From contig NC_043001.1 of assembly GCF_006345805.1 (NCBI RefSeq), forward strand, positions 48,980,001-49,044,000: a stretch of 64,000 nucleotides of DNA, written 5' to 3'. The position numbers were made by a program, and so were the translations under genes. The notes under the pieces were generated by a model. The model saw only the letters and a list, made by a program, of their open reading frames with translations, searched no databases and was not told where the DNA came from. Below, one piece after another: positions 51,683 to 55,858 of this stretch (position 1 is its first letter; the number at the start of each line of letters is the position of its first letter). Source of the stretch: Octopus sinensis (lineage: Eukaryota).

Positions 51683-51711
51683 ATATATATATATATAATT
51701 ATATATATATA

Positions 51712-54700
51712 TTCCCTCTCCATCCGTCCCCCCCCCCTTTCTACGTTTCTCTATCTCTCTCACCTCCAGCCCCCTCGATCTGTCTCTTTCTTCTCCTCCC
51801 TCGTCCACCTTCTCTCCCTTTTCATCTGTCCCTTTCTTTCTCCTGTCTTTTGTTCTCACGTGACAGCTAGCCGCTGTTGAGCGCTCTTTTCGTTTTCACA
51901 GCAGCCTCAGAAGCAACACGGATTTGTTCGTCTCCCCGTGGCCTTTAGGCACAACTTCACAAGCCAGCCCCTACTCAAATCGTCCTGTCGAAAGACCCTT
52001 GTCCTACGTCCTGTTTTTGTTTTTTTTGTTTATTTTTTATTTTTACCGTTATTGTTTTTACGTTTTTGTATTCTTATTGGTGTCACGTATTCTGTATTTT
52101 TGTTTGTGTACTTCGATCGTTTTCCGTCCTTTCGTTGTATACATTCGAAGCTTTCTTCCAGGGGATCTAATGCGCTTGGCTTAGATTTCCCTTGGCGGGC
52201 TGGCCATATCGGAGCAATCTCAAGATTAATCAGCCGAAATTGCTAAGATGATCTGGTTCTTGACTGATGACTGAGGGCTTCGAATGTCCCGTCCTGTGTT
52301 CTTGTGTCGTCTCTGTGGTGTGTTCATGTTCTTGTCCATGTCTGTATTTAATTTTACGTTTACCTATATAATCGGCGGCTACGTATCCACAATTGTCCTT
52401 ATACGATAAGTATATTTTTTTCTCAAGCTTTGATACGACTCTTATCTGTCTTTTTTCTCATCTCTCCCTCCTCCCTTATTCCATTCCGTTCTTTCCCTCT
52501 CCATCCGCCCCCCCCCCTTTCTACGTTTCTCTATCTCTCTCACCTCCAGCCCCCTCGATCTGTCTCTTTCTTCTCCTCCCTCGTCCACCTTCTCTCCCTT
52601 TTCATCTTCCCTTTCTCTTCTCCTGTCTTTTGTTCTCACGTGACAGCTAGCCGCTGTTGAGCGCTCTTTTCGTTTTCAGCAGCCTCAGAAGCAACACGGA
52701 TTTGTTCGTCTCCCCTGGCCTTTAGGCACAACTTCACAAGCCACCCCTACTCAAATCGTCCTGTCGAAAGACCCTTGTCCTACGTCCTGGTTTTGTTTTG
52801 TTGTTTATTTTTTATTTTTACCGTTATTGTTTTTACGTTTTTGTATTCTTATTGGTGTCACGTATTCTGTATTTTTGTTTGTGTACTCGATCGTTTTCCG
52901 TCCTTTCGTTGTATACATTCGAAGCTTTCTTCCAGGGGATCTAATGCGCTTGGCTTAGATTTCCCTTGGCGGGCTGGCCATATCGGAGCAATCTCAAGAT
53001 AATCAGCCGAAATTGCTAAGATGATCTGGTTCTTGACTGATGACTGAGGGCTTCGAATGTCCCGTCCTGTGGTTCTTGTGTCGTCTCTGTGGTGTTTCAT
53101 GTTCTTGTCCATGTCTGTATTTAATTTTACTGTTTACCTATAAATCGGCGGCTACGTATCCACAATTGTCCTTATACGATAAGTATATTTTTTTCTCAAG
53201 CTTTGATACGACTCTTAACTGTCTCTTTTCTCTCTCTCTCTCCCTCCTCCCTTATTCCATTCCGTTCTCTTCCTCTCCATCCGTCCCCCCCCCTTTCTAC
53301 GTTTCTCTATCTCTCTCACCTCCAGCCCCCTCGATCTGTCTCTTTCTTCTCCTCCCTCGTCCACCTTCTCTCCCTTTTCATCTGTCCCTTTCTCCTGTCT
53401 TTTGTTCTCACGTGACAGCTAGCCGCTGTTGAGCGCTCTTTTCGTTTTCAGCAGCCTCAGAAGCACACGGATTTGTTCGTCTCCCTCCCGTGGCCTTTAG
53501 GCACAACTTCACAAGCCAGCCCCTACTCAAATCGTCCTGTCGAAAGACCCTTGTCCTACGTCCTGGTTTTGTTTTGTTGTTTATTTTTTATTTTTACCGT
53601 TATTGTTTTTTACGTTTTTGTATTCTTATTGGTGTCACGTATTCTTCTGTATTTTTGTTTGTGTACTTCGATCGTTTTCCTCCTTTCGTTGTATACATTC
53701 GAAGCTTCTTCCACAGGGATCTAATGCGCTTGGCTTAGATTTCCCTTGGCGGGCTGGCCATATCGGAGCAATCTCAAGATTAATCAGCCGAAATTGCTAA
53801 GATGATCTGGTTCTTGACTGATGACTGAGGGCTTCGAATGTCCCGTCCTGTGGTTCTTGTGTCGTCTCTGTGGTGTTTCATGTTCTTTCTTGTCCTTCTG
53901 TATTTAATTTTACTGTTTACCTATATAATCGGCGGCTACGTATTCCACAATTGTCCTTATACGATAAGTATATTTTTTTCTCAAGCTTTGATACGACTCT
54001 TAATCTGTCTCTTTTCTCTCTCTCCCTCCTCCCTTATTCCATTCCGTTCTTTCCCTCTCCATCCGTCCCCCCCCCCTTTCTACGTTTCTCTATCTCTCTC
54101 ACCTCCACCCCTCGATCTGTCTCTTTCCTTCATCTCTTTCTCTCTTTCTCCTTCTCCGCCCTCGTCCACCTTCTCTCCCTTTTCATCTGTCCCTTTCTCT
54201 GTCTTTTGTTCTCACGTGACAGCTAGCCGCTGTTGAGCGCTCTTTTCGTTTTCAGCAGCCTCAGAAGCAACCACGGATTGTTCGTCTCCCCGTGGCCTTT
54301 AGGCACAACTTCACAAGCCAGCCCCTACTCAAATCGTCCTGTCGAAAGACCCTTGTCCTACGTCCTGGTTTTGTTTTGTTGTTTATTTTTTATTTTTACC
54401 GTTATTGTTTTTACGTTTTTGTATTCTTATTGGTGTCACGTTTCTGTATTTTTGTTTGTGTACTTCGATCGTTTTCCGTCCTTTCGTTGTATACATTCGA
54501 AGCTTTCTTCCAGGGGATCTAATGCGCTTGGCTTAGATTTCCCTTGGCGGGCTGGCCATATCGGAGCCATCTCATTAATCAGCCGAAATTGCTAAGATGA
54601 TCTGGTTCTTGACTGATGACTGAGGCTTCGAATGTCCCGTCCCTGGTGTTCTTGTGTCGTCTCTGTGGTGTTTCATGTTCTTGTCCATGTCTGTATTTAA

Positions 54701-55487
54701 TTTTACTGTTTACCTATATAATCGGCGGCTACGTATCCACAATTGTCCTTATACGATAAGTTATTTTTTTCTCAAGCTTTGATACGACTCTTAATCTGTC
54801 TCTTTTTCTCTCTCCCTCCTCCCTTATTCCATTCCGTTCTTTCCCTCTCCATCCGTCCCCCCCCCCTTCTACGTTTCTCTCTATCTCTCTCACCTCCACC
54901 CCCTCGATCTGTCTCTTTCTTCTCCTCCTCGTCCACCTTCTCTCCCTTTTCATCTGTCCCTTTCTCCTGTCTTTTGTTCTCACGTGACGCTAGCCGCTGT
55001 TGAGCGCTCTTTTCGTTTTCAGCAGCCTCAGAAGCAAACGGATTTGTTCGTCTCCCCGTGGCTTTAGGCACACTTTCACAAGCCAGCCCCTACTCAAATC
55101 GTCCTGTCGAAAGAACCTTGTCCTACGTCCTGGTTTTGTTTGGTTGTTTATTTTTTATTTTTACCGTTATTGTTTTTACGTTTTTGTATTCTTATTGGTG
55201 TCACGTATTCTGTATTTTTGTTTGTGTACTTCGATCGTTTTCCGTCCTTTCGTTGTATACATTCGAAGCTTTCTTCCAGGGGATCTAATGCGCTTGGCTT
55301 AGATTTCCCTTGGCGGCTGGCCATATCGGAGCAATCTCAAGATTAATCAGCCGAATTGCTAAGATGATCTGGTTCTTGACTGATGACTGAGGGCTTCGAA
55401 TGTCCCGTCCTGTGGTTCTTGTGTCGTCTCTGTGGTGTTTCATGTTCTTGTCCATGTCTGTATTTAATTTTACTGTTTACCTATATA
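51712..55487 (+). repeat. Head-to-tail array, ~4.8 copies of a ~775-bp unit
   Basis: CAGCAGCCTCAGAAGC recurs at about 51900, 52677, 53448, 54253 and 55020; copies differ mostly by small indels. Confidence 0.95.
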
Positions 55488-55858
55488 TAATTATATATAT
55501 ATATATATAAACAAAGTAAAGTTGTAAGGAACCGCACGAGTGAAAATATATATGAACGAAGGTTTGAAAATGCAACGGTCTTTTAGCGATGTTTATTGAC
55601 TTGATCGGTTTCACTTTTTTTTAGAAAAAGATTATCAAAAGTAAAATGTAAAGCTTTGTATAAGCTTTGTTGTGTTAAAAAATGGTTAGCATAAAAGTAT
55701 TAAAATATAGTCATACAGTCTTTGATCATGATAAGAAAATGTTAAAAACAGTTTGCATGAAAGTATTCAAGAAAGGGAACATAGTAAGTATTTTGAGTTC
55801 AATAAAAATCATATTTGTGTGGTAGTAGATATAATATATATATATATATAATATATAA

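What the first reader, a model, noticed from the sequence alone, without database searches (positions are those of the whole stretch)
51691..55503. Concatemeric ~775-bp element inserted in (TA)n with a TSD-like 21-mer: candidate retrozyme-like or rolling-circle product
Seen: about 4.8 head-to-tail, near-identical copies, with a non-integer number of units and no long ORF. The same 21-mer ATATATAATTATATATATATA flanks both ends (51691-51711, 55483-55503). Parts of the unit also occur as dispersed diverged copies (45430-45570; ~59630-59700 and ~60065-60135), so the unit belongs to a mobile family rather than a local satellite. Established: non-autonomous ribozyme-bearing tandem retroelements (non-LTR retrozymes) and Penelope pLTR arrays insert as multimers. 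Inference: this is one insertion of a multimeric RNA or circular template in a cephalopod. Caveats: the flanks are low complexity, and indel-dominated copy differences resemble unpolished long-read error.
Basis: partly seen in the sequence, partly recalled or inferred. Interest (0 to 1): 0.72.

Follow-up and report, generated by a model that had tools for sequence, protein, structure and literature searches.

The report
Head-to-tail retroposon array in (TA)n
A 3.8-kb block of about 4.8 near-identical head-to-tail copies of a 774-bp non-coding, transposon-derived sequence sits in a TA microsatellite; it carries no ribozyme, so it is not a retrozyme and is most likely an ordinary multi-copy insertion of a microsatellite-targeting retroposon.

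Summary
Window 51713-55487 contains four full units (776-790 bp) plus a 647-bp partial unit, 4.83 copies of a 774-bp consensus with no conserved ORF. Both ends carry an identical 21-mer that extends to 23 nt.

The TSD reading is weak. The same 23-mer also occurs in an unrelated TA tract at 59974, and interrupted-TA 21-mers often recur between unrelated loci in this window.

The retrozyme reading fails its defining test. No hammerhead or other self-cleaving ribozyme is found (Rfam at E<=10, plus a manual motif scan). The unit is about twice the retrozyme size and its RNA is not compactly folded.

What is supported: the unit's 3' module belongs to an old mobile family. Two independent diverged copies are 5'-truncated to different extents and end at a microsatellite. 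One is a clean insertion into a SINE's internal microsatellite, flanked by a 9-nt duplication and absent from four paralogous SINE copies. The array ends at that family's 3' end. A 122-bp segment occurs only inside the array, so the array was not built from its flanks.

Best reading: a 5'-truncated copy followed by four full copies of a non-autonomous retroposon, inserted into (TA)n by target-primed reverse transcription, as non-autonomous Penelope-like elements do. The partner element, single-event origin and true copy number remain untested. Interest is low to moderate.

The parts
51713..55487 (+). Whole tandem array: 4.83 head-to-tail copies of a 774-bp non-coding unit. Periodic units are 51713-52492, 52493-53268, 53269-54050, 54051-54840 and 54841-55487.
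   Evidence: GC is 44.7% and CpG o/e 0.97, against 36.9% and 0.55 in the rest of the window.
51690..51712 (.). Left copy of the TSD-like 23-mer TATATATAATTATATATATATAT
   Evidence: Weak as a TSD, because the same 23-mer is also at 59974.
55482..55504 (.). Right copy of the TSD-like 23-mer. Its first 8-10 nt (TATATATAAT) overlap in sequence with the unit's own TATATAAT, giving microhomology at the 3' junction.
51713..52372 (+). First element copy in 'element phase'. It is 5'-truncated (lacks the first 122 bp) and ends TTTACC plus the 8-nt TA tail TATATAAT (52365-52372).
   Evidence: The phase is inferred from the family 3' end.
52373..55481 (+). Four full-length element copies, each starting CGGCGGCTACG and ending TTTACC. 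Internal junction tails lie at 53139-53145, 53922-53929 and 54715-54722. The last copy ends at 55481 and runs into the flanking TA tract.
   Evidence: (junction strings).
52373..52492 (+). The ~122-bp consensus segment (unit 653-774), here 120 bp. It occurs only inside the array, once per internal junction, and is absent from both flanks.
   Evidence: No other match in the window.
52140..52289 (+). Locally structured 150-nt domain closed by a 15-bp stem (ACAUUCGAAGCUUUC / GAGGGCUUCGAAUGU). It is repeated in every unit and contains the CTGATGA that superficially resembles a hammerhead core.
   Evidence: MFE -55 kcal/mol, z = -3.97. No helix II or GAAA follows the CTGATGA.
45414..45548 (-). Old, 5'-truncated copy of the same family (matches unit ~497-616). 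It is inserted at the edge of the internal (TA)n(TG)n microsatellite of a SINE-like element and is flanked by TGTGTCTGT (45405-45413 and 45549-45557).
   Evidence: Four paralogous SINE copies lack the insert.
59633..59699 (-). Old, 5'-truncated family copy (unit 559-627). In element orientation it ends ...ACCTTAA followed by (TA)n.
60069..60135 (-). Duplicate of the previous copy, in the second unit of the 436-bp tandem repeat.

Best explanation
The array is a young, non-coding, head-to-tail multimer of a non-autonomous retroposon whose family targets microsatellites.

In element phase each unit starts CGGCGGCTACG and ends ...TTTACC plus a short TA tail (TATATAAT). The locus then reads as one copy truncated by 122 bp at its 5' end, followed by four full copies. 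The last copy ends exactly at the family's 3' terminus, inside a (TA)n tract.

Proposed mechanism (inferred):
1. A reverse transcriptase/endonuclease supplied in trans nicks the TA tract. It could come from a Penelope-like element or a microsatellite-tailed LINE.
2. The TA-rich target end pairs with the UAUAUAAU at the 3' end of the element RNA and primes cDNA synthesis.
3. Synthesis runs from the 5' end of one unit onto the 3' end of the next. The template is either a tandem transcript or successive template jumps, as in the partial-tandem and multicopy head-to-tail insertions of Penelope-like elements.
4. Synthesis stops 122 bp short of a unit start.
5. Staggered second-strand cleavage would leave the 17-23-nt TA-rich duplication.

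Copy number may have changed afterwards by unequal exchange. No ribozyme is involved.

Shown: the anatomy, the absence of ribozymes, the mobility and microsatellite association of the family, and the internal-only 122-bp segment. Inferred: the RNA intermediate, the partner enzyme, and a single-event origin.
For: 1. Three independent family members share a 3' end next to a microsatellite but have different 5' ends: the array, 45414-45548, and 59633-59699 (with its duplicate). This is the classical 5'-truncation pattern.
2. The 45.4-kb copy is a clean insertion into the internal (TA)n(TG)n of a SINE-like element, with a 9-nt flanking duplication. Four paralogous SINE copies are empty at that site.
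3. The array's right junction lies at the family 3' end. It shows 8 nt of microhomology (TATATAAT) with the TA target.
4. The 122-bp segment (unit 653-774) is found only at internal junctions, so the array cannot have arisen by duplicating sequence between the flanking TA tracts.
5. All four internal junctions are the same, TTTACC-TATA(T)AAT-CGGCGG.
6. CpG o/e is 0.97 and GC 44.7%, against 0.55 and 36.9% for the rest of the window. Units are 94-98% identical, with mostly error-like indels. Both point to a recent arrival.
7. Published Penelope-like elements show these traits. Naiad and Chlamys lack hammerheads, prefer (TA)n or (CA)n targets, form partial tandems with a 5'-truncated upstream copy, and have non-autonomous relatives that give multicopy head-to-tail insertions (PMC8557442).
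8. A Penelope-like element with the CX2-5CxxC linker proposed to mediate microsatellite bias lies about 1.5 kb away, so such machinery exists or existed in this genome.
Against: - No autonomous partner sharing the unit's 3' end is in the window. The neighbouring Penelope-like fragment has no similarity to the unit.
- Canonical C-terminal-EN Penelope-like elements universally carry hammerheads, and the unit has none. If the host is a cephalopod, the hammerhead-less Naiads are reported there only as ancient remnants.
- The TSD is low-complexity, and the same 23-mer occurs at an unrelated locus.
- No inverted truncated copy and no 30-40-bp tail typical of many Penelope-like insertions is seen.
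- The family 3' end rests on only two independent old copies.
- Two shared indel variants split the units into {1,2} and {3,4,5}. This fits local stepwise duplication at least as well as a single insertion.
Confidence: 0.45

Rival explanations
1. DNA-level origin. The unit is a satellite-like repeat that happens to contain an old retroposon fragment. A short array was copied into this site from a source array or an extrachromosomal circle. The route would be rolling-circle replication or microhomology-mediated template switching, at a break in a fragile TA tract next to a 234-bp palindrome.
For: TATATAAT microhomology at the right junction and T/TT at the left. A perfect 61-nt inverted repeat around (TA)n lies 10 bp from the site, which is break-prone DNA by established knowledge of AT-rich palindromes. 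The copy number is non-integer. Short euchromatic satellite arrays at microsatellite-like or AT-rich junctions are described in beetles, oysters and humans (abstracts listed: PMC5139131, PMC8268682, PMC7719264).
Against: The array end coincides with the 3' terminus at which independent old copies also end. Those copies show 5' truncation and a TSD, which are retroposon hallmarks. A DNA break-repair event has no reason to stop there beyond the 8-nt microhomology. No source array is available to test.
Confidence: 0.2
2. Local amplification. Only one truncated copy plus one full copy arrived, either as a double insertion into the first copy's TA tail or as a PLE-type partial tandem. Unequal crossing-over or replication slippage then expanded the dimer to 4.8 copies.
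For: Two shared indel variants group neighbouring units as {1,2} and {3,4,5}. A second tandem duplication bounded by TA tracts lies 4 kb away (436 bp x 2.2 at 59545-60480). Double insertion of transposons as a seed for satellites is documented (bioRxiv 10.1101/158386, abstract).
Against: Nothing in the window excludes it. It differs from the best explanation only in when the extra copies arose. The identical 8-nt internal junctions fit both readings.
Confidence: 0.2
3. Retrozyme in the strict sense. Each unit encodes a self-cleaving ribozyme, is released as a 774-nt RNA, circularised, and copied by rolling-circle reverse transcription into a multimeric insertion.
For: Tandem non-coding units, low GC, a larger-than-4-bp TSD-like flank, and a Penelope-like element nearby. 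A CTGATGA heptamer is conserved in the unit and in the 45.4-kb copy.
Against: No match to any ribozyme family at E<=10 on either strand, even when only 1.6 kb is searched. No helix II or GAAA follows the CTGATGA. The unit is about twice the described size. Whole-unit folding is not better than shuffles. Units are not all identical.
Confidence: 0.03
4. Assembly artefact. The repeat exists, but the copy number, the inter-unit differences and perhaps the junctions are products of unpolished or mis-joined long reads.
For: Single-unit differences are indel-rich, at 73 indel against 40 substitution columns. This is unusual for real divergence.
Against: The adjacent 61+61-nt inverted repeat is perfect, so the flank is accurate. 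Two variants are shared between units, and one 24-bp insertion is not error-like. Both junctions are clean.
Confidence: 0.1

Closest known systems
Non-autonomous Penelope-like elements and PLE partial tandems (Naiad/Chlamys type; Craig et al. 2021, PMC8557442)
   Same: Head-to-tail copies with a 5'-truncated upstream copy. Insertion into a (TA)n microsatellite where TSDs are hard to read. No hammerhead ribozyme. Non-coding unit. Multicopy head-to-tail insertions are reported for non-autonomous members.
   Different: No 3'-end similarity to an autonomous PLE could be shown. No inverted truncated copy or 30-40-bp tail is seen. The only PLE in the window is of the C-terminal-EN type and is unrelated in sequence. 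Naiads are reported as ancient remnants in cephalopods.
Metazoan non-LTR retrozymes (Cervera & de la Pena 2020, PMC7229834; Li et al. 2026 preprint 10.64898/2026.07.22.740005)
   Same: Tandem, non-coding, lowish-GC units. TSD-like flank longer than 4 bp. Occurs in a genome that holds PLEs.
   Different: No type I hammerhead in any unit, which is the defining feature. The unit is 774 bp against 150-450 bp. The predicted RNA has no compact fold.
LINE-dependent retroposons with microsatellite 3' tails (established knowledge of CR1/L2/RTE-type partners and of microsatellite-specific LINEs)
   Same: Common 3' end, variable 5' truncation, TSD, a 3' end abutting a simple repeat, and priming by target/tail microhomology.
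   Different: Such elements normally insert as monomers. No A/B-box head or tRNA, 5S or 7SL relation was detected. No partner LINE is identified.
Short euchromatic satellite-like arrays, TE-borne or TE-seeded (e.g. Crassostrea gigas Helentron-associated repeats PMC7492417; double-insertion model bioRxiv 10.1101/158386)
   Same: A few tandem monomers, partly TE-derived, dispersed in gene-poor, repeat-rich DNA, with junctions in simple sequence.
   Different: No Helitron or Helentron termini: no 3' CTRR and no subterminal hairpin. The unit, at 774 bp, is much longer than typical oyster repeats. The array end coincides with a retroposon 3' end.

Membership tests
Non-LTR retrozyme | Type I hammerhead ribozyme in every tandem unit | tested here: not met
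   No ribozyme hit within the array at E<=10 in the 5.5-kb scan, and zero hits in the 1.6-kb dimer scan. No hit reaches gathering score in the window. Manual core plus helix II scan is negative on both strands.
Non-LTR retrozyme | Head-to-tail tandem repeats of a non-coding unit | tested here: met
Non-LTR retrozyme | Unit size about 150-450 bp | tested here: not met
   The consensus is 774 bp. The size range is from PMC7229834.
Non-LTR retrozyme | Expressed as monomeric linear and circular RNA | not testable with these tools
   No transcriptome is available.
Penelope-like element derivative (non-autonomous) | Partial or multicopy head-to-tail tandem with a 5'-truncated upstream copy | tested here: met
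   The first copy lacks 122 bp and is followed by four full copies. The phase depends on the inferred family 3' end.
Penelope-like element derivative (non-autonomous) | Insertion bias for microsatellites such as (TA)n | tested here: met
   The array and both independent old copies abut TA or TG/TA microsatellites.
Penelope-like element derivative (non-autonomous) | 3'-end similarity to an autonomous PLE | tested here: inconclusive
   No similarity to the only PLE fragment in the window, 56978-57975.
Penelope-like element derivative (non-autonomous) | Adjacent inverted truncated copy and/or 30-40-bp tail extension (frequent, not obligatory) | tested here: not met
   No minus-strand unit match near the array. 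No extension was recognised at either junction.
LINE-mobilised retroposon / SINE | Shared 3' end, variable 5' truncation, and TSDs among copies | tested here: met
   with n = 3 independent insertions. The TSD is clear only for 45414-45548 (9 nt) and is low-complexity for the array.
LINE-mobilised retroposon / SINE | Pol III head derived from tRNA, 5S or 7SL | tested here: not met
   ARAGORN finds none. Rfam gives no hit in the unit at E<=10. Only a TTCGAAT hairpin is seen by eye.
Helitron/Helentron-borne tandem repeats | 5' TC, 3' CTRR with a subterminal GC-rich hairpin, and no TSD | tested here: not met
   The array ends ...ACTGTTTACC, with no CTRR and no hairpin. Only the trivial 5' TC is present.
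Satellite DNA | Long homogeneous arrays elsewhere in the genome | not testable with these tools
   No eukaryotic genome collection is searchable. Two metagenome DNA scans and one ORF-based protein search found nothing.

The most novel reading that the evidence does not exclude
This could be a ribozyme-free analogue of retrozymes. The 774-nt unit RNA would be excised and circularised by host factors rather than by a hammerhead. A Penelope-like or LINE reverse transcriptase would then copy it by rolling circle and insert it as a multimer into TA microsatellites. That would be a route to new tandem arrays that needs no self-cleaving RNA.
Probability: 0.06. Interest if true: 0.7.

Novelty: new member of a known kind. 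Interest (0 to 1): 0.3.

Why it matters
If the best reading is right, the locus is a fresh example of how microsatellite-targeting retroelements seed short tandem arrays, the raw material of satellite DNA, in a repeat-rich invertebrate genome that is probably a cephalopod. It would also hint at recent activity of a PLE- or LINE-type enzyme with TA-tract preference there. It is a useful caution as well. Tandem non-coding units with TSD-like flanks are not sufficient to call a retrozyme, and identical 'TSDs' inside TA microsatellites recur by chance. None of this overturns current understanding.

Tried and rejected
- Ribozymes: three of the four Rfam scans covered the array (one search covered the flank 56400-60600), and I ran a hand-written hammerhead descriptor. 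Nothing was found in the array. The only hits were spurious miRNA-model matches in the flanking (ATGT)n, TG-rich and TA microsatellites.
- tRNA or SINE head: ARAGORN found none. A tRNA-like reading of CTGATGA as an anticodon loop, with TTCGAAT as a T-loop, did not fold (second sequence, z = +1.8) and was dropped.
- Viroid-like compact fold: rejected.
- Helitron termini: absent.
- Relation to the neighbouring Penelope-like fragment: no similarity and no hammerhead there either.
- Other copies in public data: nothing found. I tried a translated unit ORF against 5.8 billion proteins, two exact or gapped DNA patterns against metagenome contigs, and exact-product look-ups of three window ORFs. No eukaryotic genome collection was available.
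- The palindrome at 51447-51680 as a Stowaway or Tourist MITE with a TA or TWA TSD: the flanks (..GTAAT / TTATAT..) give no clean duplication, so I make no such claim.
- Origin by unequal exchange between the two flanking TA tracts: rejected, because the internal junctions carry a 122-bp segment absent from the flanks.
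Full report
**Observation.** The region 51713-55487 is a head-to-tail array of a 774-bp unit.
- A consensus built from a MAFFT alignment of the five units matches the window five times in a row on the plus strand: 51712-52492, 52493-53268, 53272-54050, 54051-54840 and 54841-55487. 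Identities are 94.4-98.1%.
- The last unit stops at unit position 652, so there are 4.83 copies.
- Repeat spacing is 765-805 bp. Tandem Repeats Finder missed the array only because its longest period is 500.
- No reading frame is conserved. The longest stop-free stretch in a consensus trimer is 121 aa of low-complexity sequence, and ORFs differ between units.
- Single-unit differences are dominated by small indels, at 73 indel against 40 substitution columns. The indel count includes one 24-bp CT-rich insertion in unit 4.
The perfect 61-nt inverted repeat immediately to the left shows that the flank itself is accurate.
- Two indel variants are shared between units and split them into {1,2} and {3,4,(5)}. 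Some variation is therefore real.

**The flanking 21-mer.** It is present at both ends and extends to 23 nt: TATATATAATTATATATATATAT at 51690-51712 and 55482-55504.
- The identical 23-mer also occurs at 59974 in a different TA tract.
- Of 151 distinct interrupted-TA 21-mers in the window, 64 recur between loci more than 100 bp apart.
- The AATT interruption is seen in one of 14 other interrupted TA loci. I estimate the chance of the match at roughly 0.07-0.15.
- The duplication is compatible with a target-site duplication but does not prove one.
- Its right copy overlaps in sequence with the unit's own continuation. The unit reads ...TTTACC-TATATAAT-CGG and the right junction reads ...TTTACC-TATATATAAT-TATATA. 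There are therefore 8 nt of microhomology at the right junction, and the true duplication could be 17-23 nt.

**Is it a retrozyme?** Non-LTR retrozymes are defined by a type I hammerhead ribozyme in each tandem unit. Units are 150-450 bp (PMC7229834; preprint 10.64898/2026.07.22.740005).
- Rfam returned no hit within the array at E<=10 in the 5.5-kb scan, and zero hits in a 1.6-kb scan that used the laxest filters.
- Nothing in the 64-kb window reached a gathering score.
- A hand-written scan for CUGANGA, an adjoining helix II and GAA found nothing on either strand of the consensus. The single CTGATGA at unit 545 is followed by CTGAGGGCTTC-GAA, which cannot form helix II.
- The whole unit does not fold better than shuffled sequence: z = -1.6 on the plus strand and 0.03 on the minus strand.
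- The defining feature was tested and not met, so I do not file the element as a retrozyme.

**What the unit is.**
- They lie at 45560-45434 (unit 497-616, E 1e-5) and at 59699-59633 and 60135-60069 (unit 559-627). All are on the minus strand. The last two are duplicates within a 436-bp tandem repeat.
- When aligned in unit orientation (alignment A1), the 59.6-kb copy follows the unit to ...ACC and then runs into (TA)n. That is the position where the array ends.
- The 45.4-kb copy ends about 25 nt after the conserved GTTCTTGT block, at (CA)n(TA)n.
- Their 5' ends differ: unit 559, about unit 500, and unit 1 for the array.

The 45.4-kb copy can be read as an insertion.
- It sits between the internal (TA)n(TG)n microsatellite and the downstream half of a SINE-like element.
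- Four other copies of that SINE in the window are contiguous at this point (alignment A2).
- The insert, 45414-45548, is flanked by TGTGTCTGT on both sides (45405-45413 and 45549-45557).

The family therefore has a common 3' end, variable 5' truncation, a target duplication and an association with microsatellites. These are the hallmarks of target-primed reverse transcription (established knowledge of non-LTR and Penelope-like elements).

**Reading the array in element phase.** If ...TTTACC plus a short TA tail is the 3' end, each unit is an element that starts CGGCGGCTACG.
- The array is then one copy lacking its first 122 bp (51713-52372) followed by four full copies (52373-55481).
- All internal junctions are TTTACC-TATA(T)AAT-CGGCGG.
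- The 122-bp segment (unit 653-774) is found only at these internal junctions and in neither flank.
- The array therefore cannot have been produced by duplicating the sequence between the two flanking TA tracts. At least 1.8 units came from elsewhere.
- The array is also compositionally foreign and undecayed. GC is 44.7% and CpG o/e 0.97, against 36.9% and 0.55 for the rest of the window.

**Mechanism.** The closest published behaviour is that of Penelope-like elements.
- Craig et al. (PMC8557442) describe frequent 5' truncation and partial tandems with a truncated upstream copy.
- They also describe a strong insertion bias for (TA)n in Naiads and for (CA)n in Chlamys, which often hides the TSD, and a lack of hammerheads in these clades.

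I therefore propose trans-mobilisation. A nick in the TA tract primes on the UAUAUAAU at the RNA 3' end. Reverse transcription continues from one unit's 5' end onto the next unit's 3' end, using a tandem transcript or template jumps. It stops 122 bp short of a unit start.

This is inference. Several points count against a PLE partner:
- No partner is identified.
- The neighbouring Penelope-like fragment (minus strand, 57975-56978) is unrelated in sequence.
- Canonical C-terminal-EN PLEs carry hammerheads.
- Naiads are reported as old remnants in cephalopods.
- A microsatellite-tailed LINE partner is equally possible.

**Rivals.**
- DNA-level capture of a satellite fragment at a fragile TA/palindrome site would explain the microhomology and the non-integer copy number. 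It would not explain why the end coincides with the family 3' terminus.
- Arrival of a partial dimer followed by unequal exchange fits the {1,2}|{3,4,5} variant pattern. It also fits the second TA-bounded tandem duplication 4 kb away. It differs from my best reading only in timing.
- An assembly artefact could affect copy number but is unlikely to have created the locus.

**Host.** The window is a TE- and microsatellite-rich metazoan sequence.
- It contains a LINE-type RT ORF, LTR-retroelement protease and integrase remnants, a mariner-like HTH ORF and the PLE fragment.
- The RT ORF's only named relative is an Octopus vulgaris predicted protein, at 85% identity over 16% of the query. 'Cephalopod' is plausible but not established.

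**Verdict.** The locus is best seen as a young head-to-tail multimer of a non-autonomous, microsatellite-targeting retroposon, a new member of a known kind. Interest is low to moderate. The main open points are the partner enzyme, single-event against stepwise origin, and confirmation by reads. All three need the full genome and raw data.

Noticed in passing
window 51447-51507 and 51620-51680: Perfect 61-nt inverted repeat arms around a ~112-nt (TA)n core, a 234-bp palindrome. BLAST extends the imperfect self-complementarity to 51421-51705. It ends 10 bp from the TSD-like 23-mer. It looks like a MITE or foldback, but no clean TSD could be read.
   Followed up: partly
window 59545-60480: 436-bp unit repeated 2.2 times (96% matches). 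Each unit holds a 5'-truncated copy of the same family as the array unit, plus a SINE-like element with A/B-box-like motifs. Units are separated by long (TA)n tracts, one of which contains the same 23-mer as the array flanks (59974).
   Followed up: partly
window 56978-57975, minus strand: 5'-truncated, frameshifted Penelope-like element. It has the RT C-terminal region, a CX4CxxC linker (CGRSNCRTC) and a GIY-YIG core with an internal CxxC (LLYAIRCEGCHKTHVGQT). Its homologue P0002 reaches the Pfam GIY-YIG cut-off. No hammerhead was detected nearby.
   Followed up: partly
window 24313-24700, 2822-3145, 12205-12492, 44851-45315, 45316-45718: Abundant SINE-like family with an internal (TA)n(TG)n microsatellite between a head (…CCAACCACATGGTTCCGGGTTCAGTCCC…) and a tail (…GGTTCGGCAAAAGA…GTCAAATGACTGAAACAAGTAAAAG). 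The internal microsatellite served as the target for the 45414-45548 insertion.
   Followed up: partly
window 58839-59066 and six other sites (e.g. 32258-32481, 15360-15583, 13369-13558): Another dispersed ~230-bp repeat family, with 72-89% identity between copies. Not classified.
   Followed up: no
window 50942-51201: (ATGT)65 microsatellite followed by a 32-bp GT-rich minisatellite. It produces many spurious sub-threshold matches to miRNA covariance models (mir-297, mir-5014 and others).
   Followed up: no
window 274-2175 plus strand; 38927-41209 minus strand; 25199-25612 minus strand: Other TE remnants: a LINE-type RT ORF followed by a PHD-finger ORF, LTR-retroelement aspartyl protease and integrase fragments, and a mariner-like HTH ORF.
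   Followed up: partly
window 51713-51880 and the same phase in each unit: About 170 nt of almost pure pyrimidine (CT-rich, with a C9-10 run) at the start of each periodic unit, ending at a CACGTGAC palindrome. This gives the array a strong strand asymmetry, with AT skew about -0.45 to -0.5. Unit 4 has a 24-bp CT-rich insertion here.
   Followed up: no
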